Source: Octopus sinensis (taxonomy: Eukaryota). Taken from it: a stretch of 64,000 nucleotides of DNA. Below, piece after piece: positions 8,093 to 61,148 of this stretch; position 1 is the first letter of the stretch, and every line of letters begins with the position of its first letter. Location of the stretch: assembly GCF_006345805.1 (NCBI RefSeq), contig NC_043014.1, positions 39,122,001 to 39,186,000 of the forward strand, written 5' to 3'. The notes below the pieces were generated by a model that did not search any database, had not been told where the DNA came from, and was given only the letters and a program-made list of their open reading frames with translations. The position numbers and the translations under genes are program-made.

Positions 8093-8329
8093 AGTCAAGT
8101 TGACAGTAGCAACATGAAATGGTGTGCCTCGTGCAGGGACACAATGGGCTGCTTGATCCAGGAATCAAATCCTCAATCTCATGATAGTGAACGCAACACT
8201 CTAGTCAATAGGGCATGTATTTTCACACACATGGTGTGTGTGTGTGTGTGTGACTTTGTTGACAGTGACTCCCATGTTTAGTCATTAGTGGTTTATTCAA
8301 AAACCATTTTCTTACACACTAGCATCTTC

Positions 8330-8440
8330 ATCATTACCACCACCACCACCACTACCATCACCACCACCACCACTACCATCACCCTTACCACCATCTCCTC
8401 CACCACCACCATAATCATCATCATCATCATCATCATCACC

Positions 8441-8474
<34 letters not shown>

Positions 8475-8500
8475 TCACTACCACCATCATCACTACCATT
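8330..8500. repeat. (CAC/CAT)n trinucleotide tract
   Basis: Direct reading. Confidence 0.9.
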
Positions 8501-8597
8501 GTCATACGTCTGCTGTCCATGCCGTCATGTATAACACGTAAGTAACCACCAGTTACCAGATTCTGACAAATGGTTGTTCTGTTCTTCGTCATTCCAG

Positions 8598-8845
8598 GGA
8601 AGCAGACCGAGACAGCTGTTCAAGAGAAGATGACTCAGGAAGCAACAACGATACTTTCTCTAATTCTAAACCAACTTACACCAATGGATATTCCACTGAA
8701 TTTCCTAAATTCTTCGAAACATTTGAATCCATTATTAATAAGAACATGAAGTATATGCATAAACACTTCTTCAATGCTGATTCTGCACAGAACAACTTAC
8801 ATTCTGACTATTTTCCATCATCTTCGAGTAGTTTTGCTGAAGAGC
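8598..8845 (+). CDS. Exon E2 of zinc-finger gene (EADRDSCSREDD...DYFPSSSSSFAEE), S/N/D-rich
   Basis: attccag acceptor, gtaagt donor, 248 nt open in unique AT-rich sequence, phase 2 to 1. Confidence 0.7.
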
Positions 8846-8951
8846 GTAAGTTACCAATTCTTCATTTTTTTTACTTTTTGTCTTTTACTTGTTTCAGTCA
8901 TTGGGTCATGGCCATGCTGGTGCACTGCCTTGGAAAGTACAGTTAAACAAA

Positions 8952-9669
8952 TTGCCATATTCTGAACCCTTTGCTTCCCTGGGCATGGACACATTGAAAC
9001 TCCGACGTCTGACAGCTGACACCCATAAAATTATTAACCATCATACAAACAATAACTCTGAGCACCTTTTCAAACTCCGCCCGTCTAACACCCGTGGACT
9101 TATTTACAAAGTCAGAAAACAGCACAGCTCCCATGACTTTAGGAAACATTTTTTCATGCTGAGAGTTGCTGAAGCATGGAACAAACTGCCGGCATCAGTT
9201 GTTAGTTGTCGGAGCACTGCATCCTTCAAAACTTCCATGCTTCCTTGCCCATAAAATTATCAACCATCGTACAAACAATAACTCTGAGCACCTTTTCAAA
9301 CTCCACCCGTCTAACACCCGTGGACATATTTACAAAGTCAGAAAACAGCACAGCTCCCATGACTTTAGGAAACATTTTTTCACGCTGAGAGTTGCTGAAG
9401 CATGGAACAAACTGCCGGCATCAGTTGTTAGTTGTCGGAGCACTGCATCCTTCAAAACTTCCATGCTTCCTAAGATTCGCCAACACTACACCTGATTTTC
9501 TCCCCTTCATACACACACAAGCATGTGTCTGACTTATACACTGTTCACTTTCCAGACATTTGTACATTACTGCATATGCTTTATAATGCTTTATACGCAC
9601 TTTTAACAAGTTGTAGAGCACCTGAGCAATGTATACAATAATTTCATTATTATTATTATTATTATTATT
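8952..9669 (+). mobile_element. CR1-clade LINE 3' fragment with internal tandem duplication and (ATT)n tail
   Basis: RT C-terminal motif TRGHIYKVRK...RKHFFTLRVAEAWNKLP present twice. Confidence 0.85.
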
Positions 9670-18765: not shown

Positions 18766-19001
18766 ACACACACACACACACACACACACAAACATACACA
18801 CAAACACACACACACAAACATACACAAACACACACACACAAACACAACACACACACACACACTCACACATACACACAAACACACAGTCACGCAAACACAC
18901 GCACACGCAACACACACACACAACAAACACAACACACACACACACACACAAACATACACATGCAAACACACACAAGTACACACACAAACCTACACATGCA
19001 A

Positions 19002-19034
<33 letters not shown>

Positions 19035-19430
19035 CAACACACTCACACATACACACAACACACAGTCACGCAAACACACGCACACGCAAAAACACACACA
19101 CACAACACACACACACACACACACAAACATACACATGCAAACACACACAAGTACACACACAAACATACACATGCAAACACACACACACAAACATACACAA
19201 ACACACACACACACCACACACACACACACACACACCAAACACACACACACAAACACACACCACACACACACACACACACCACACACACACACACACCACA
19301 CACAAACACACATGCAAACACACACAAGTACACACACAAACATACACATGCAAACACACACACACACAAACACACACAGAAACACACACACACACACACA
19401 CACAAACATAAACACACACACACACACACA
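18766..19430. repeat. Complex (CA)n satellite with higher-order blocks
   Basis: Recurring aaacatacacatgcaaacacacacaagtac blocks. Confidence 0.9.
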
Positions 19431-23935: not shown

Positions 23936-24003
23936 CTCCACCCCAAAGGTCAGAACTGTTTTCATGTGCATTTTGCGGGCTGGGTTTTAACCTTGAGGAA
24001 ATG
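23936..24003 (+). CDS. Exon E7, first half of C2HC zinc finger (PPQRSELFSCAFCGLGFNLEEM)
   Basis: Long pyrimidine tract plus ttcag, gtgagt donor, phase 1 to 0; completes a finger with E8. Confidence 0.75.
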
Positions 24004-24120
24004 GTGAGTACATCTATCAGCCTCCTTGTCATCATAATCACCATTTTACTTATTTCAGTTATTGGACCATGGCCCATGCTGGGGTTCCACCTTGAAAGAT
24101 TTAATCAAATGAATTGACAC

Positions 24121-24266
24121 TCGTACTTATCTTTAAAGTCTGGTACTTATTCTATCAGTCTCTTTTGCTGAACTGCTAAATTACAGGGATGTAAACAAAC
24201 CAACACCAGCTGTCAAGCAGTGACAGACAACAAACACAAACACCTACATACACTCCTCCTACACCT

Positions 24267-24309
<43 letters not shown>

Positions 24310-24904
24310 ACAGGCTTCCACACAGTTTTTTGCCTACTAAATTCACTCACAAGGATTGGTCAGCCCAGGACTATAGCAGGAGACATTTGCCAAGGGTATT
24401 GCACAGTGGGACTGAACCTGAAGCCAGGTGGTTCCAAACCATACAGCCATCTCTACACAACTACACAGCCATGGCTCTCTCTACTCTTTTACTTGTTTCA
24501 GTCATCTGACTGCAGCCATGCTGGAGCACCGCCTTTAGTCGAGCAAATCGACCCCAGGGCTTACTCTTTGTAAGCCTAGTACTTATTCTATCAGTCTGTT
24601 TTGCTGAACCACTAAGTTACGAGGACGTAAGCACACCAGCATCGGTTGTCAAGCGATGTTGGTGGGGAGGGACAAACACAGACACACAAATGCACACACA
24701 CACATACATATATACATATACATATATACATATATTATACATATACATATATATATATTTCAGTTTCTGTCTACCAAATCCACTCACAAGGCTTTGGTCG
24801 GCCCGAGGCTATAGTAGAAGACACTTGCCCAAGATGCCATTCAATGGGACTGAACCCGGAACCATGTGGTTGGTAAGCAAGCTACTTACCACACAGCCAC
24901 TCCT
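24121..24904 (-). mobile_element. Two tandem SINE family B copies (about 24121-24475 and 24482-24904)
   Basis: Reverse complement of 17183-17590. Confidence 0.85.
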
Positions 24905-25068
24905 GCGCCTATGTTTAAATGTGTCATTCAAGAAGGTCTTCAGTTTGAACAATTTTCATGATGTTTCATATTTAGATGCTTTTATTAAATTCATTCAATT
25001 GTTAAACATAAATAAATCATGGATTTGATTTACTGTCATGTGATGTTTTACCAACCGTGTATATATAT

Positions 25069-25308
25069 ATATAAATTAGAAAAAAATCACCTTTTATCAA
25101 TTCAAATTGATAGAATAAGTACTAGGCTTACAAAGAAATTAAATTACACCATCTAGAAAATTACATATAATAGAAATATAAAAAATAAAATAACAATAAT
25201 ATACCGATGATTAAGTAAATTGCAAAATAATTATGTAATTTAATAAATATGTAATTTAATTGTTCATTTTGAATTGATAAAAGGTGTTTTTTTTCTAATT
25301 TTTATATA
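25069..25308. mobile_element. Small TA-flanked MITE containing a 30-bp piece of SINE B
   Basis: ~38-bp inverted arms; gatagaataagtactaggcttacaaagaa inside. Confidence 0.55.
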
Positions 25309-25575
25309 TATATTGTATTTTGTGAAATTTGATTTAGTATTTCTAAATTGAATTTTTCCCTGTAAGTTAGGAATAATATTCCATCAAATTATCATTATAT
25401 ATATATATATATACAGAGAGAGATACAGACAGACAATGTAATATTTTAATCAAGCCCAAACGCCCACTCAAAGCTTTAATTATCTTAGAACTTCACCGAG
25501 TCTAAATCCAGTTCTGGTTTCTGTTTATATTTATCTCAAGATAATAAAAAAATAAATGTCTTGTGCATCTTACAG

Positions 25576-25714
25576 AGAATTCACGAACGGAGATGTATGA
25601 AAACCAGATCTCACAGGAAGTCCTCTGATCCCTTTAGAAAAGCCTTCACAGCTGAACCTTATACTGAAGATAGAAAAACTAACCTCTTTTTCAAATCTTC
25701 TTCAAATGAATCAG
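25576..25714 (+). CDS. Exon E8, second half of zinc finger (RIHERRCMKTRSH...FKSSSNES)
   Basis: cttacag acceptor, gtaagt donor; phase 0 is the only stop-free frame. Confidence 0.75.
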
Positions 25715-34665: not shown

Positions 34666-34711
<46 letters not shown>

Positions 34712-35165
34712 AATTATTGTATACAGTGCTCAGGTGCTCTACAACTTGTCAAAAGTGCGTATAAAGCATATGCAGTAATGTACAAATGTCTGGGAAGTGA
34801 ACAGTGTATGAGTCAGATACATGCTTGTGTGTGTATGGAGGGGAGAAAATCAGGTGTAGTGTTGGCGAATCTCAGGAAGCATGGAAGTTTTGAAGGATGC
34901 AGTGCTCCGACAACTAACAACTGATGCCGGCAGTTTGTTCCATGCTTCAGCAACTCTTAGCGTGAAAAAATGTTTCCGAAAGTCATGGGAGCTGTGCTGT
35001 TTTCTGACTTTGTAAACATGTCCACGGGTGTTAGACAGGTGGAGTTTGAAAAGGTGCTCAGAGTTATTGTTTGTAAGATGGTTAATAATCTTATGGGTGT
35101 CTGCCAGACGTCGGAGTTTCAATGTATCCATGCCCAGGGAAGTAAGGTGTTCAGAATATGGCAAA
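34666..35165 (-). mobile_element. CR1 3' fragment, frame intact
   Basis: PYSEHLTSLGMDTLKLRRLADTHKII...WNKLPASVV...EIRQHYT. Confidence 0.9.
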
Positions 35166-38397: not shown

Positions 38398-38501
38398 AAT
38401 TCAGTACCTGTGCCTGCCCTAAAAATGCAAGCATGAAAAAGATTCACTTGCCCTCCTGTAGTGAATATAAGTATTCGTCGTCACCTTTTAGCCTCCGTCA
38501 G
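38398..38501 (+). CDS. Exon E9, degenerate second Cys/His finger (FSTCACPKNASMKKIHLPSCSEYKYSSSPFSLRQ)
   Basis: Strong pyrimidine tract plus ttccag, gtaagt donor; only phase 1 to 0 is open, matching E8. Confidence 0.7.
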
Positions 38502-39622: not shown

Positions 39623-39698
39623 AATGATGGGTCTATTTTCCCTTCAAAATCTGAGTGGACCCCACCTGTATACACAACTTCATCAAGTTTTGAAACTG
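39623..39698 (+). CDS. Exon E11 (NDGSIFPSKSEWTPPVYTTSSSFET)
   Basis: Long pyrimidine tract plus ctatag, gtaagt donor, phase 0 to 1. Confidence 0.6.
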
Positions 39699-40552: not shown

Positions 40553-40929
40553 TTCTTAGCCACATTTTCCTGCTGGTATTGACCTACAGATGTATTCAGA
40601 ATTACCATCAGCGGCAACAATCTCTGCCAAACATCATGGACATTTCTGCCTTCTGCCTTGACTAACTTCTAATCCAAACACAGATGTGCTCTACCTTCCC
40701 GTGTTCCCTCATCATATACTTCTCCGATTGCATACAACCACACATCCATCCTTCCATGGTTGCATGCCTGGGGTGTTGATATTTGTTAAAGTAGATTTTC
40801 TTATTTTACAGTTGATGTCCTTGCTAATACTTACTACCCAGTCAGAAAGTGTCTTTACCCTGGCACAGTACGATGGCTGTAGTTAAATCCGAACTTACTA
40901 CCTTTGTGCTGTCAGTAGTCAAGTATCTT

Positions 40930-44686: not shown

Positions 44687-44771
44687 ATTTTATTCCAGAA
44701 CCAATAGTACCATCATTATTAATACAAAGAATAAACAATATTTTAACCAGAAATTCCGACTTATATAATAG
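44687..44771 (+). CDS. Exon E12 (FIPEPIVPSLLIQRINNILTRNSDLYN)
   Basis: tttcag acceptor, gtaagc donor; only phase 1 to 2 is open, matching E11. Confidence 0.6.
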
Positions 44772-47318: not shown

Positions 47319-47903
47319 ATATTGAAAAATTTTTTTTTTTTTTTCTAGAAAACTTGATGAGACCAATTTCTTGAAATTACGTTCCCGTTGCACCAGTTGT
47401 CAGTTTGTGTACAGTAATGGTGAAGAGTTTATATGCACGTGTTATATCAGCTCTCGTTTGATGTAAACTCCTGTAATGTTGAACCAATAAAACTTTTTTT
47501 TTTACTTTGTGTTTGCGCGTGTGTGTGTGTGTGTGTCTGACCATATGTACTTTAAAGTCACTCCCTTAATAAACTGCAGTGAATAAATTAATACACAATG
47601 ATTATTTTTCTCTTTAATTTTTTATTCTGTTGTTTTCAGCAAGGGTCACATAGACAGCCAAAATGGTAGAACACCAAGCCTGATATCTTCACCATCACCA
47701 TCATCAACCTCATTGTTATCATCTTCATCATCATCATCATCATCATCATTGTTTAATGTCTGTTTTCTGTGCTGGCATGAGATGGACCATTTCACAGGAG
47801 CCAAAAAGCTAGAGGGTGGTGCTTAGCCCTAATGTTTTACTTTGGTATGGTTTCTATATCTGGATGCCCTTCCTAATGCAAACCACTTCACAGAGTGTAT
47901 TCT

Positions 47904-50862: not shown

Positions 50863-50957
50863 GACTTAAAAGAATGGCTGGAAGAAATTAATGTATTTTC
50901 TATGAGGAAAGGTGTATAACAGAATCAAAAGACCAAGTTTTTGGAAACATAGCAGCA

Positions 50958-51306
50958 TTCAAACTCCACCTGTCTAACATCCGTGGACTTATTTACAAAG
51001 TCAGAAAACAGCACAGCTCCCATGACTTTCAGAAACATTTTTTCACGCTAAGAGTTGCTGAAGTATGGAACAAACTGCCGGCATCAGTTGTTAGTTGTTG
51101 GAGCACTGCATTCTTCACTACTTCCATGCTTCCTGAGATTCACCAATACTACACCTGATTTTCTCCCCTCCATACACATGCAAGCATGTATCTGACTCAT
51201 ACACTATTCACTTTCCAGACATTTGTACATTACTACATATGCTTTATATACACTTTTGATAAGTTGTAGTGCACCTGAGCACTGTATACAATAATTTCAT
51301 TATTAT
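50958..51306 (+). mobile_element. CR1 3' fragment
   Basis: Matches other CR1 copies. Confidence 0.85.
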
Positions 51307-58159: not shown

Positions 58160-58710
58160 GTTTGTGCCGATTTATAGTAGCTTACCTTTCGACTTATTTT
58201 AGAACATGGTTGAGTCCATAAAATAGGATTTGACTACACCTCCATTTAGAGCACAGTTTCAGCTATCTTTTCGTGGAAGAAGGTTTATTTTCCTATAACC
58301 TGTGTTAATTCTGTAACCCTTTAAAATGAAGATAAGAAAGTTCATTTTCGGCACTTGATGCTTTGGGAACCAGACAAAAATTGCTGCAGCTCAGCTGGGA
58401 TGTGTTACCCCCATCCTCCATATTCACCAGATATTGCTCCTTTGGATTTCCACTTATTCAGATCTCTGCAGAATAGTCTGAATGGTAGAAATTTCAATTC
58501 CTTGGATGATGTAAAAAGATACCTTGATGAATTCTTTGCCATGAAACCACCTCAATTCTGGAAAGAGGGTATTTTCAAGTTAAGGGAAAGATGAAGATGC
58601 ATTTGAAACAAAATAGTTCATATTTGGTTGATTAAAAATGTAATGGCAAGTATTTATTGACCTTTTTCTTTCCTTTAAAAATCAGCATGAACTTTCCAGA
58701 CAACCCAATA
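58160..58710 (+). mobile_element. Internally deleted mariner, same deletion as the 45-kb copy
   Basis: HPPYSPDIAPLDFHLFRSLQNSL; right TIR catgaactttccagacaacccaata. Confidence 0.9.
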
Positions 58711-59203: not shown

Positions 59204-59528
59204 AAGCAAATATCCTTCCATGTTGTAACTAACCCCCACCTCCCCCCAAAAAAGAACAAAACTGTATATTTTAAATTCCTTGCTTTTAATATATTACAAA
59301 TATAATCAGAAACACCTGCATAACAACGCCATTTATTGATTGAATAGGTATATTGATTCAAAGCATGGAGAATATGCTAAATATATGGCAAATATTCCAA
59401 GATCATAACCTCAAGATTTGGTTGCTACAAATTCTTTTCTCTCCAACCATTTACTATTTCTTCGGATGTAATATCCTATACCAATGGTATTACAATTACA
59501 TCCTTTTCCAGCTTCATAGGGCTAATGC

Positions 59529-60240
<712 letters not shown>

Positions 60241-61148
60241 TTCCCATGCTTTCATGGGTTGGATGGAGTTTATTAACGATTTTCTATGGCTGGATATCCT
60301 TCAGGTCACCAATGCTTACCTGTTTCCAAACAAGATAATATTGCCCCTTTGGCTAGATATGTTTGCACAGAATATTGGAAATGAATGACATTCATTACAA
60401 TAACCATGTGATGTCAAGACAAAGTGACACAAATACTCTCACACACATATCCACATATATATATATATACTTATACGCCCCCTACACACACACTATAGCT
60501 TTTTATACTGACCCTACATGCAAATAAAAGCAGTAAGCAATATTTTTCCAAGACAGGTTTGACCAGTAACCTAATAAATAGTTCTAATGCCAAAAATAAA
60601 GGAAAGGATCACATAGTTATTCCATATTGGCTACCTCTAATGAGTGTATGGTTATATAATCAGATAGTTACCAAACACTCCGTTGTACCCCTAGTGTGAA
60701 ACCAATTGTTAAGATCAGCCGTGATGGATATATAATGCTGTACACTCCAGTTTCTGTCTACAAATCCACTCACAAGTCTTTGGCTGGCCTGGAACTGTAG
60801 CTATAGTAGAAGACACTTGCCAAAGGCACCATGCAGTGGGAGTGAACCTGAAACCGTATAGTAAGGAAGCAAATGTTTTAACCACACATCCATGCCTGCA
60901 TTTATACATTTTGCACAATTCCAAGCTCATTTCTCTCTTACTGAAAACAGGGAACAATTTGACCTGAATATTAAATTTGTCCTGTATAATAGGACATAAG
61001 AAGGCTATGGCCCTTATCTTTAACCTTTGTAATGTCAAAATTTAAAGAAATTCTGCCTAAGGCATTACAATGCATTGCTTCTTCTTTTTTGTTTGTTTTC
61101 TTCTTTCCAAGGAACATAACTTTACTTATAAACAACGAAAAAAAACAA

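What the first reader, a model, noticed from the sequence alone, without database searches (positions are those of the whole stretch)
23936..25600. C-x2-C-x11-H-x3-C zinc finger assembled across a 1572-nt intron
Splicing E7 to E8 gives FSCAFCGLGFNLEEM|RIHERRC. The spacing matches C2HC fingers of the RNF114/125/138/166 E3 ligases (RNF125 recalled as CAECDTLVCLSEMRAHIRTC) and the TRAF-type fingers of XAF1/TRAFD1 (XAF1 recalled as CKFCKLDMQLSKLELHESYC). It is the best independent evidence for the reading frame and points to a ubiquitin or innate-immunity role (inference).
Basis: partly seen in the sequence, partly recalled or inferred. Interest (0 to 1): 0.7.

Follow-up and report, generated by a model that had tools for sequence, protein, structure and literature searches.

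The report
Split zinc finger in octopus J-protein
The two exons really do splice to encode a conserved zinc finger, but it belongs to a cephalopod Hsp70 co-chaperone (J-domain protein), not to a ubiquitin ligase or immune adaptor, so it is a sound but ordinary gene feature.

Summary
Exons 23936-24003 and 25576-25714 (+ strand) are separated by a 1572-nt phase-0 intron. Spliced, they encode FSCAFCGLGFNLEEM|RIHERRC, a C-x2-C-x11-H-x3-C motif.

- **Junction.** It is contiguous in the annotated orthologues of Octopus bimaculoides (XP_052831161, 94% identical), O. vulgaris (identical) and Argonauta hians. It is also contiguous in uninterrupted cDNA-like contigs from two more distant, unidentified species.
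- **Conservation.** All four ligands and the spacing are kept. pN/pS is about 0.11. The same intron splits the finger in Argonauta.
- **Gene.** It is not a RING or TRAF protein. It is a class-C J-domain (DnaJ/Hsp40) protein. Its J-domain exon lies about 33 kb upstream of the window.
- **Finger family.** It is a lone ββα C2HC module in a mostly disordered tail. It fails the RNF125-type Pfam model, whereas an RNF125 control scores 50 bits. It scores below threshold for zf-C2HC_2 in the octopods, and for zf_UBZ and XAF1_C in the distant orthologues.

A ubiquitin or innate-immunity role is not supported. The most likely role is a partner- or client-recognition module of an Hsp70 co-chaperone. I class it as a new member of a known kind, of low to moderate interest.

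The parts
8598..8845 (+). Coding exon 2 of the O. vulgaris model. It is the first exon of the gene inside the window and encodes (K)EADRDSCS...PKFFETFESIINKNMKYMHKHFF...SFAEE. It starts with one base that completes a codon and ends with one extra base.
   Evidence: tblastn with P0001 (92% identity) and P0145 (98%). The splice sites ccag|GG and GAGC|gtaagt were read. Joining C+CT gives Pro, which matches AEE-PPPQ in the orthologues.
23936..24003 (+). It encodes PPQRSELFSCAFCGLGFNLEEM, the CxxC knuckle and beta-hairpin half of the finger. Cys codons are 23965-23967 and 23974-23976.
   Evidence: It is 100% identical to P0001 and P0145.
24004..25575 (+). A 1572-nt phase-0 intron that splits the finger between Met and Arg. 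It is mostly repeats: two tandem SINE-like copies, each followed by a CA-rich microsatellite, and a 50-nt inverted-repeat (MITE-like) pair at 25061-25110 / 25264-25313.
   Evidence: An intron at the same position is present in O. vulgaris (1564 nt) and Argonauta hians (3990 nt).
25576..25714 (+). It encodes RIHERRCMKTRSHRKSSDPFRK...SSSNES, the helix half of the finger (His 25582-25584, Cys 25594-25596) followed by a basic tail. It ends with one extra G.
   Evidence: tblastn with P0001, P0145 and P0146.
38398..38501 (+). Coding exon 5, encoding (E)FSTCACPKNASMKKIHLPSCSEYKYSSSPFSLRQ. It holds a degenerate second finger, C-x-C-x9-H-x3-C.
39623..39698 (+). Coding exon 6, encoding NDGSIFPSKSEWTPPVYTTSSSFET.
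40812..40882 (+). Alternative terminal coding exon, encoding (V)DVLANTYYPVRKCLYPGTVRWL followed by the stop. It is used in the O. bimaculoides RefSeq model.
44687..44771 (+). Coding exon 7 of the O. vulgaris model, encoding (D)FIPEPIVPSLLIQRINNILTRNSDLYN.
47349..47466 (+). Terminal coding exon of the O. vulgaris model, encoding (R)KLDETNFLKLRSRCTSCQFVYSNGEEFICTCYISSRLM. The stop is at 47464-47466 and an AATAAA signal lies at 47486-47491.
   Evidence: The C-terminus is conserved in P0147 and P0148.

Best explanation
The two exons are consecutive coding exons of the window species' orthologue of Octopus bimaculoides LOC106872147. They are exons 3 and 4 of the O. vulgaris model. The gene encodes a class-C J-domain (DnaJ/Hsp40-type) protein so far found only in cephalopods.

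Splicing across a conserved phase-0 intron joins two halves of one zinc finger. The first half is a CxxC knuckle and beta-hairpin. The second is an alpha-helix carrying H-x3-C. Together they make a single zinc-binding ββα C2HC finger of the C2H2-like kind.

The finger is the only confidently folded element in a long, serine-rich, mostly disordered C-terminal region.

Inferred mechanism:
- The N-terminal J domain has an HPD motif. Its exon lies about 33 kb upstream of the window. It docks on Hsp70 and stimulates its ATPase.
- The tail specifies the client, partner or cellular location. Its conserved elements are the C2HC finger, with invariant surface Glu (His+1) and Arg (Cys4+4), and a PxxFxxFE...NM motif.

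Shown: the exons, the junction, ligand conservation, purifying selection, the ββα prediction and the J-domain context. Inferred: zinc binding, Hsp70 co-chaperone activity and the targeting role. The ligand of the finger is unknown.
For: **Sequence and splice sites.**

**Junction contiguous in relatives.**
- XP_052831161 of O. bimaculoides: E=2.6e-35, 94% identity over all 68 residues.
- O. vulgaris P0145, with identical exons.
- Argonauta hians P0146.
- Logan contigs L002 and L004-L006, which carry uninterrupted 529-540-aa ORFs on contigs of 2.0-2.3 kb and so look like spliced transcripts.

**Conservation.**
- Invariant EL..CAFCG....L.....HE..C...R across sequences that are only 31-33% identical overall.
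- pN/pS is 0.11 in the finger and 0.22 over both exons against Argonauta.
- The intron sits at the same position in Argonauta and O. vulgaris.

**J domain.** Pfam DnaJ at E about 1e-24 in every full-length orthologue, with HPD at residues 31-33. There are strong matches to solved J domains.

**Fold.**
- AlphaFold2 of the finger gives a ββα fold with pLDDT about 90 over residues 11-30.
- In the full-length model, only the N-terminal region (J domain plus a predicted hairpin to residue 98) and the finger (residues 311-340, pLDDT 68-78) stand out.
- Foldseek matches are all ββα zinc fingers.

**Chance control.** 1 of 1285 comparable splice pairs gives the motif.
Against: - No Pfam zinc-finger family is reached at its curated cut-off. 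The best is zf-C2HC_2 at 14.8-18.6 bits against a cut-off of 27.
- No RNA reads from the window's own species were available. The junction there rests on identical O. vulgaris exons and on relatives.
- The J-domain exon is outside the window. It is linked only through the orthologous O. vulgaris locus, which is 95-99% identical to the window.
- Zinc binding and Hsp70 stimulation are untested.
- The MSA is shallow (4-5 sequences), so the structure models are weak evidence.
Confidence: 0.8

Rival explanations
1. The finger is a UBZ-like ubiquitin-binding zinc finger. The protein would then couple Hsp70 to ubiquitylated clients, as a functional analogue of DNAJB2/HSJ1, which uses UIMs for this.
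For: - The spacing equals that of UBZ4 fingers (established knowledge).
- Foldseek places the WRNIP1 UBZ-ubiquitin complex (3vht_B, rmsd 1.1 A over 28 columns) and the RAD18 UBZ (5vf0, 2mrf) among the top matches.
- The Pfam zf_UBZ model gives sub-threshold hits for the two distant orthologues (15.3-16.8 bits, E=0.005-0.017).
- A copepod J-protein (Acartia fossae, P0189) also carries two C-terminal C2HC fingers.
Against: - All of these scores are below the curated cut-offs, and Foldseek E-values are >=0.28.
- The acidic residue two positions after the His, which UBZ4 fingers of RAD18 and WRNIP1 need for ubiquitin binding (from memory, not tested here), is R, Q or L in these proteins and is not conserved.
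- Classical DNA-binding C2H2 fingers match equally well.
Confidence: 0.12
2. One reading: an RNF114/125/138/166-type or TRAF/XAF1-type C2HC finger of a ubiquitin ligase or innate-immunity adaptor.
For: - The spacing is identical.
- The octopus finger is 46-48% identical to the RNF125 finger.
- XAF1_C scores 17.2 bits (E=0.0037) for one distant orthologue.
- The FLN29/TRAFD1 zf-TRAF chain scores E=0.28.
Against: - There is no hit to PF18574 for any orthologue, while the RNF125 control fragment scores 50.4 bits.
- There is no hit to zf-TRAF.
- Pfam detects no RING, MATH/TRAF or further C2H2 domain above its cut-off; a short UIM was not tested specifically. The protein has a DnaJ domain instead.
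- The similarity to RNF125 lies mostly in 'EEMRIH', which is not conserved in the distant orthologues (SDMKEH/FDMKEH).
- The profile of all orthologues scores RNF125 at only E=0.55.
Confidence: 0.03
3. The finger and its basic tail bind nucleic acid, or act as a nuclear-targeting element. This would direct the J-protein and Hsp70 to chromatin or RNP substrates.
For: - The best PDB profile hits are DNA-binding C2H2 fingers: Gfi-1 (E=1.5e-4) and ZBTB32.
- Foldseek hits include CTCF, SALL4 and BCL11A fingers.
- A basic stretch follows the finger (MKTRSHRK), with an invariant Arg.
Against: - A single finger rarely gives specific DNA binding (established knowledge).
- The C2H2 hits reflect the generic Y/F-x-C-x2-C-G-K-x-F motif and stop before the last ligand.
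- The spacing is x11, not the classical x12.
Confidence: 0.15
4. The motif is a chance product of joining two open frames. These would not be real coding exons, or the Cys/His would not be functional.
For: Pfam zinc-finger scores are below threshold. The word-index homology search with the junction peptide found nothing.
Against: - The junction is contiguous in the annotated orthologues and in transcript contigs.
- All four ligands are invariant at 31-33% overall identity.
- pN/pS is 0.11 with synonymous sites near saturation.
- Only 1 of 1285 comparable splice pairs yields the motif.
Confidence: 0.01

Closest known systems
Octopus bimaculoides LOC106872147 (XP_052831161.1 / XP_014774508.1, 'uncharacterized protein'), O. 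vulgaris 'hypothetical predicted protein' (UniRef name 'DnaJ homolog subfamily B member 9') and Argonauta hians 'meiotically up-regulated gene 185 protein-like'
   Same: These are orthologues. Identity to the window's exons is 94%, about 99% and 64-67%. They share the exon junction, the finger and the J-domain-plus-tail architecture.
   Different: The 3' ends differ between the models (terminal exon 40812-40882 against exons 44687-44771 plus 47349-47466). None of these records annotates the zinc finger, and their names come from the J domain only. Unlike DNAJB9/ERdj4, the J domain starts at residue 3, leaving no room for the N-terminal signal peptide that DNAJB9 has (from memory; no signal-peptide predictor was run).
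Pfam zf-C2HC_2 (PF13913), the C2HC/C3H-type fingers of ZC2HC1A/B/C and of multi-finger proteins such as the Leishmania tarentolae axonemal protein in PDB 9y6s chain 4E
   Same: - The spacing C-x2-C-x11-H-x3-C is identical.
- Shared non-ligand positions: Leu three residues before Cys1, Gly after Cys2, Phe/Tyr at Cys2+4, an aliphatic residue at His-3 and Glu at His+1.
- It is the only Pfam hit for the octopod fingers.
- 9y6s_4E is the best PDB sequence hit for the octopus peptide (E=1.3e-4).
- The sampled top relatives found by phmmer are PF13913 proteins.
   Different: - Scores are 14.8-18.6 bits against the 27-bit cut-off.
- It lacks the usual Arg at Cys2+2.
- The invariant 'CAFC' and the Leu at Cys2+6 are rare in that family.
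- It is a single finger rather than 3-10 copies.
- The distant orthologues do not hit PF13913 at all.
RNF125-type C2HC finger (Pfam PF18574 zf_C2HC_14; PDB 5dka, 8gbq)
   Same: Same spacing, 46-48% identity to the octopus finger, and a ββα fold with rmsd 1.8 A over 27 columns.
   Different: There is no PF18574 hit, whereas the RNF125 control scores 50.4 bits. There is no adjacent RING, which the RNF125 finger supports (PDB titles of 5dka and 8gbq). The similarity is not conserved in the distant orthologues.
UBZ4 ubiquitin-binding zinc fingers (RAD18, WRNIP1)
   Same: Same ligand spacing (from memory) and fold. They are among the top Foldseek matches.
   Different: The key acidic residue after the His is absent (from memory). 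Only sub-threshold zf_UBZ scores are seen, and only in two orthologues.
Class-C (type III) J-domain proteins, and DNAJB2/HSJ1 as an example of a J domain joined to small ubiquitin-binding motifs
   Same: An N-terminal canonical J domain with HPD, followed by a non-conserved specificity region.
   Different: - There is no G/F region, no CxxCxGxG zinc-finger domain (PF00684) and no DnaJ C-terminal domain (PF01556).
- The tail carries one C2HC finger rather than UIMs.
- A comparable J + C2HC architecture was seen only in a copepod transcript (P0189).

Membership tests
RNF114/125/138/166 C2HC finger (Pfam PF18574 zf_C2HC_14) | A match to the family profile at or above its gathering score (25 bits) | tested here: not met
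   There is no PF18574 hit at E<=10 for the octopus, Argonauta or two distant-orthologue fingers. The positive control, a 28-residue RNF125 finger, scores 50.4 bits at E=1.9e-13.
RNF114/125/138/166 C2HC finger (Pfam PF18574 zf_C2HC_14) | The finger sits next to an N-terminal RING domain, with C2H2 fingers and a UIM downstream | tested here: not met
   Pfam on the full-length orthologues P0001, P0145, P0146, P0147 and P0148 reaches its cut-off only for DnaJ. No RING or further C2H2 domain is detected. A short UIM was not tested specifically.
TRAF-type zinc finger (zf-TRAF; XAF1/TRAFD1) | A match to the zf-TRAF or XAF1 profiles above threshold | tested here: not met
   - There is no zf-TRAF hit.
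- XAF1_C scores 17.2 bits (cut-off 25.8) for one of four fingers only.
- The FLN29 zf-TRAF chain scores E=0.28 with the orthologue profile.
- No positive control was run for zf-TRAF.
zf-C2HC_2 (Pfam PF13913; ZC2HC1-type C2HC/C3H finger) | Ligand spacing C-x2-C-x11-H-x3-C | tested here: met
   The same spacing occurs in 684 distinct fingers from the 141 related proteins.
zf-C2HC_2 (Pfam PF13913; ZC2HC1-type C2HC/C3H finger) | A profile score at or above the gathering score (27 bits) | tested here: not met
   The octopus finger scores 13-14.8 bits and the Argonauta finger 18.6 bits. P0147 and P0148 give no hit.
zf-C2HC_2 (Pfam PF13913; ZC2HC1-type C2HC/C3H finger) | Family signature at non-ligand positions (C-G-R-x-F after Cys2, aliphatic at His-3, Glu at His+1) | tested here: inconclusive
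   Gly, Phe/Tyr, the aliphatic residue and Glu are shared. The Arg (70% in the family) is absent, and several invariant cephalopod residues are rare in the family. The comparison set was itself retrieved by similarity to the query.
UBZ4 ubiquitin-binding zinc finger | A conserved acidic residue two positions after the His, on the ubiquitin-contacting helix | tested here: not met
   That position is R (Octopus), Q (Argonauta) or L (P0147, P0148). The requirement itself is recalled from the RAD18 and WRNIP1 literature and was not re-derived here.
UBZ4 ubiquitin-binding zinc finger | Binding to ubiquitin | not testable with these tools
   This needs a binding assay. Foldseek similarity to 3vht_B, 5vf0 and 2mrf is at fold level only.
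J-domain protein (DnaJ/Hsp40), class C | A J domain with an HPD motif | tested here: met
   PF00226 scores E=2.6e-24 to 9.4e-25, with HPD at residues 31-33, in all full-length orthologues. The J-domain exon is not in the window. It lies about 33 kb upstream in the 95-99% identical O. vulgaris locus L001.
J-domain protein (DnaJ/Hsp40), class C | Absence of the class A/B hallmarks (G/F region, CxxCxGxG domain PF00684, C-terminal domain PF01556) | tested here: met
   No PF00684 or PF01556 hit appears in P0001 or P0145-P0148 (and the precomputed domains). Absence of a G/F region was judged by eye from the sequences.
ββα (C2H2-like) zinc-finger fold | Two short strands carrying CxxC, followed by a helix carrying the last two ligands | tested here: met
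   - The AlphaFold2 model has strands at residues 9-10 and 17-18 and a helix from residue 20, with pLDDT about 90 over residues 11-30.
- The listed Foldseek matches are nearly all ββα zinc fingers.
- This is a prediction only, from a 4-sequence alignment.

The most novel reading that the evidence does not exclude
Cephalopods, and independently at least one copepod, may have evolved J-domain co-chaperones that read ubiquitin or a ubiquitin-like mark through a UBZ-like C2HC finger. Such a protein would deliver Hsp70 directly to ubiquitylated clients. It would be a zinc-finger counterpart of the UIM-bearing DNAJB2, and a previously undescribed J-protein class.
Probability: 0.1. Interest if true: 0.5.

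Novelty: new member of a known kind. Interest (0 to 1): 0.25.

Why it matters
For annotating this window, the result fixes the frame and the exon chain of a real gene. That gene is the orthologue of LOC106872147, and the window holds its coding exons 2-8 and two alternative 3' ends. The result also corrects the functional label from 'ubiquitin ligase or innate-immunity factor' to 'Hsp70 co-chaperone with a C2HC finger'.

More broadly, it adds an unannotated zinc finger to a J-protein so far found only in cephalopods. The finger is conserved and sits below Pfam thresholds. It is also a clean example of a phase-0 intron placed between the knuckle and the helix of a ββα finger.

It does not open or settle any long-standing question. 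The ligand of the finger is the only interesting unknown.

Tried and rejected
- **Word-index homology search with the 68-aa junction peptide.** It found nothing, although the orthologue is in the collection. The exhaustive phmmer search was needed.
- **Ab initio exon finding.** Home-made splice PWMs plus self-repeat masking recovered E7, E8 and the exons at 38398 and 39623. It could not chain them, and it missed 8598-8845 and the 3' exons. It was superseded by tblastn with the orthologues.
- **Search for further intact fingers in the window.** None was found.
- **Rfam on 20-30 kb.** No match.
- **Search for the J-domain exons in the window.** Absent. They lie upstream, as shown by the O. vulgaris locus.
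- **Foldseek.** It cannot separate UBZ, RNF125, TRAF and classical C2H2 fingers for a 41-residue model, since all E-values are >=0.28.
- **Structure prediction with the spliced window protein as first row.** O. vulgaris P0145 was used instead.
- **Species of the Logan runs ERR12374249 and SRR276660xx.** Not identifiable from the paper library.
- **Literature on a J domain joined to a UBZ finger.** Nothing relevant. The ZC2HC1A papers give no mechanistic information.
- **Pfam on three transposon-like ORFs.** No hits.
- **RNF125 and TRAF membership.** Rejected for the reasons given in the membership table.
Full report
**1. The observation**

The window is AT-rich eukaryotic DNA (34-42% GC), dense in SINE-like repeats and microsatellites. 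About 45% of it is repeated within the window itself.

At the stated coordinates the + strand reads ...ccattgtttcag|CTCCACCCCAAAGG...GAGGAAATG|gtgagt. After 1572 nt it reads ...gcatcttacag|AGAATTCACGAACGGAGATGT...AATCAG|gtaagt.
- E7 is 23936-24003.
- The intron is 24004-25575.
- E8 is 25576-25714.

In the only open joint frame the splice gives PPQRSELFSCAFCGLGFNLEEM|RIHERRCMKTRSHRK.... This is C-x2-C-x11-H-x3-C, with a phase-0 intron between Met and Arg.

As a chance control I paired every donor and acceptor of comparable score within 20 kb on both strands. That gave 1285 pairs. Only this pair yields the exact motif across a junction.

The intron is almost entirely repeats: two tandem SINE-like copies, each followed by a CA-rich microsatellite, plus a MITE-like 50-nt inverted repeat.

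**2. What gene it is**

The word-index protein search with the 68-residue junction peptide found nothing. An exhaustive phmmer search of 1.84 billion representatives did find a match. One protein matched end to end: P0001, E=2.6e-35, 94% identity, residues 226-293 of 376.

P0001 is XP_052831161.1, 'uncharacterized protein LOC106872147 [Octopus bimaculoides]'. It carries a canonical N-terminal DnaJ domain (PF00226, E=2.6e-24).

Further orthologues:
- O. vulgaris P0145 (500 aa).
- Argonauta hians P0146 (417 aa).
- Two more distant sequences, P0147 and P0148 (529 and 540 aa), known only from Logan assemblies. They sit as uninterrupted ORFs on contigs of 2.0-2.3 kb, so they look like spliced transcripts. 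One variant, P0380, is seen on 106 contigs. Their species could not be identified.

tblastn of these proteins onto the window gives this exon chain (splice sites read):
- 8598-8845
- 23936-24003
- 25576-25714
- 38398-38501
- 39623-39698
- then either a terminal exon 40812-40882 (O. bimaculoides model), or 44687-44771 plus 47349-47466 (O. vulgaris model). The second ending has AATAAA 20 nt after the stop, and its C-terminus is conserved in P0147 and P0148.

The window-encoded protein is 94% identical to P0001 and about 99% identical to P0145. The window DNA is 94-99% identical to the O. vulgaris locus OX597833.1:47.16-47.25 Mb (L001).

The J-domain exon (residues 1-222 in one exon) is not in the window. 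In O. vulgaris it lies about 33 kb upstream of the position matching window base 1. Any in-window 'E1-E5' are unsupported by the orthologous models.

**3. Is the finger real and constrained?**

The sequences are only 31-33% identical overall, yet these finger positions are invariant: E-L-x2-C-A-F-C-G-x4-L-x5-H-E-x2-C-x3-R. All four ligands and the spacing are kept in every orthologue and isoform that reaches this region.

Against Argonauta, synonymous sites are near saturation (pS 0.78-0.86). pN/pS is 0.11 in the 27 finger codons and 0.22 over both exons.

The same phase-0 intron splits the finger in O. vulgaris (1564 nt) and in Argonauta (GAAGTG|gtaagt ... ttccag|AGAATC, 3990 nt).

AlphaFold2 on the 41-residue finger alignment gives two short strands and a helix, with pLDDT about 90 over residues 11-30. 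In a full-length model of P0145, only the N-terminal region (the J domain plus a predicted hairpin to residue 98) and the finger (residues 311-340, pLDDT 68-78) rise above the disordered background.

These were a different acceptor, or non-conserved Cys/His positions. One caveat remains: no RNA reads from the window's own species could be examined.

**4. Which kind of finger?**

- The octopus and Argonauta fingers hit only zf-C2HC_2 (PF13913), at 13-18.6 bits against a 27-bit cut-off.
- The P0147 and P0148 fingers hit zf_UBZ instead. P0147 also hits zf_C2H2_6 and XAF1_C. All are below their cut-offs.
- No finger hits the RNF125-type model PF18574. A 28-residue RNF125 control fragment scores 50.4 bits on it.
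- No zf-TRAF hit appears.

Against PDB sequences:
- The octopus peptide is closest to a two-finger 'C2HC/C3H-type domain-containing protein' (9y6s_4E, E=1.3e-4). That protein is part of the Leishmania tarentolae axonemal doublet.
- RNF125 scores E=2.7.
- A profile of the four distinct orthologue fingers hits classical C2H2 fingers (Gfi-1, 1.5e-4), then 9y6s_4E (0.003), FLN29/TRAFD1 (0.28) and RNF125 (0.55).

Foldseek returns only ββα zinc fingers, with no significant discrimination; all E-values are >=0.28. They include classical C2H2, the WRNIP1 and RAD18 UBZ, Sgf11, RNF125 (48% identity over 27 columns) and FLN29.

The other 141 phmmer hits carry mostly 3-8 fingers of identical spacing. Six I sampled were all PF13913 proteins. 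Their high summed scores largely reflect ligand matches repeated over many fingers.

A position-by-position census of 684 such fingers gives a mixed picture. The cephalopod finger shares Leu(-3), Gly(Cys2+1), Phe/Tyr(Cys2+4), an aliphatic residue at His-3 and Glu(His+1). It lacks the family's Arg(Cys2+2) and has its own invariant residues (CAFC, and Leu at Cys2+6).

My conclusion is that this is a divergent C2HC member of the C2H2-like ββα class. It is closest to zf-C2HC_2, but it is not a demonstrable member of any curated subfamily. It demonstrably fails the RNF125-type model.

**5. How it most likely works**

The protein has a canonical J domain with HPD. It has no G/F region, no CxxCxGxG domain and no DnaJ C-terminal domain. 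This makes it a class-C J-protein.

In such proteins the J domain recruits and activates Hsp70, and the rest of the chain provides specificity (established knowledge of the Hsp40 family).

In this protein the rest is a long Ser-rich region predicted to be disordered, with three conserved islands:
- a PxxFxxFE...NM motif (exon 8598-8845);
- the C2HC finger with its basic tail;
- a degenerate second finger, C-x-C-x9-H-x3-C (exon 38398-38501; lost in P0148).

I therefore infer that the finger is a zinc-stabilised recognition module for a partner, a client or a location. Its ligand is unknown.
- A ubiquitin-binding (UBZ-like) role remains possible but weak. The acidic residue that UBZ4 fingers need is absent and the position is not conserved.
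- A nucleic-acid or nuclear-targeting role is about as likely.
- The ligase or innate-immunity reading is not supported.

**6. Novelty and verdict**

The gene is already present in public annotations, as an uncharacterised or hypothetical protein. An early O. bimaculoides annotation split it into two entries. The finger itself is not annotated because it falls below Pfam thresholds.

A J domain joined to C2HC fingers also occurs in a copepod transcript (P0189 of Acartia fossae). I found no literature on this architecture.

This is a correct and well-supported observation of an ordinary feature: a new member of a known kind. Interest is about 0.25.

Noticed in passing
window 38398-38501 (+): The next coding exon encodes a degenerate second finger, C-x-C-x9-H-x3-C (CACPKNASMKKIHLPSC). 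It is kept in O. bimaculoides, O. vulgaris, Argonauta and P0147 but lost in P0148. It has no Pfam hit.
   Followed up: partly
window 40812-40882 versus 44687-44771 + 47349-47466 (+): There are two alternative 3' ends of the gene. A short terminal exon is used in the O. bimaculoides RefSeq model. Two further exons are used in the O. vulgaris model, with the stop at 47464-47466 and AATAAA at 47486-47491. Only the second ending is conserved in the distant orthologues.
   Followed up: partly
window 24004-25575: The finger-splitting intron is mostly mobile-element debris. It holds two tandem SINE-like copies (about 24136-24433 and 24572-24871, 73-82% identical), each followed by a CA-rich microsatellite. 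It also holds a MITE-like pair of 50-nt inverted repeats (25061-25110 / 25264-25313, 94% complementary).
   Followed up: partly
L003 47377|51368 (Argonauta hians); L001 59928|61493 (O. vulgaris): The phase-0 intron between the CxxC half and the HxxxC half of the finger sits at the identical codon boundary in Argonauta (3990 nt) and O. vulgaris (1564 nt). The split therefore predates the Octopus-Argonauta divergence.
   Followed up: yes
upstream of window base 1 (L001 2001-2666): The J-domain exon (residues 1-222 in one exon) lies about 33 kb upstream of the window, giving a first intron of about 40 kb. Short transcripts and ORFs that end after this exon (P0149, P0264, P0382-P0384; 193-219 aa) suggest a J-domain-only isoform or intron retention.
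   Followed up: no
public records (no window coordinates): The first O. bimaculoides annotation split this gene into two UniProt entries. A0A0L8H8N2 holds the J domain and is named 'DnaJ homolog subfamily B member 9'. A0A0L8HA43 holds the C-terminal part. The names 'DNAJB9' and 'mug185-like' derive from the J domain alone.
   Followed up: partly
P0189 (Acartia fossae transcript; not in the window): A copepod J-protein has a DnaJ domain, a G/F-like region and two C-terminal C2HC fingers (PF13913 at 26.1 bits, just under the cut-off). The architecture is analogous and possibly independent in origin.
   Followed up: partly
window 58325-58591 (+): An open frame reads ...PYSPDIAPLDFHLFRSLQNSLNGRNF...FFAMKPPQFW..., which resembles the C-terminal part of mariner/Tc1 transposases (from memory). 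Pfam gave no hit.
   Followed up: partly
window 59344-60335, 18780-19300 and 8300-8540: Long low-complexity tracts are present. One is a roughly 1-kb trinucleotide-type repeat that is open in several frames, giving His, Ser and Asp runs. Another is about 0.5 kb of TG/CA-rich repeat. A third is an ACC/ATC-type repeat just upstream of coding exon 2.
   Followed up: no
window 8850-9500, about 34700-35000 and about 50900-51200 (+/-): Repeated ORF fragments such as ...HLFKLRPSNTRG.IYKVRKQHSSHDFRKHFF.LRVAEAWNKLPASVVSC... occur several times. They look like the 3' end of a non-LTR retrotransposon ORF (from memory). One copy was scanned against Pfam and gave no hit.
   Followed up: partly
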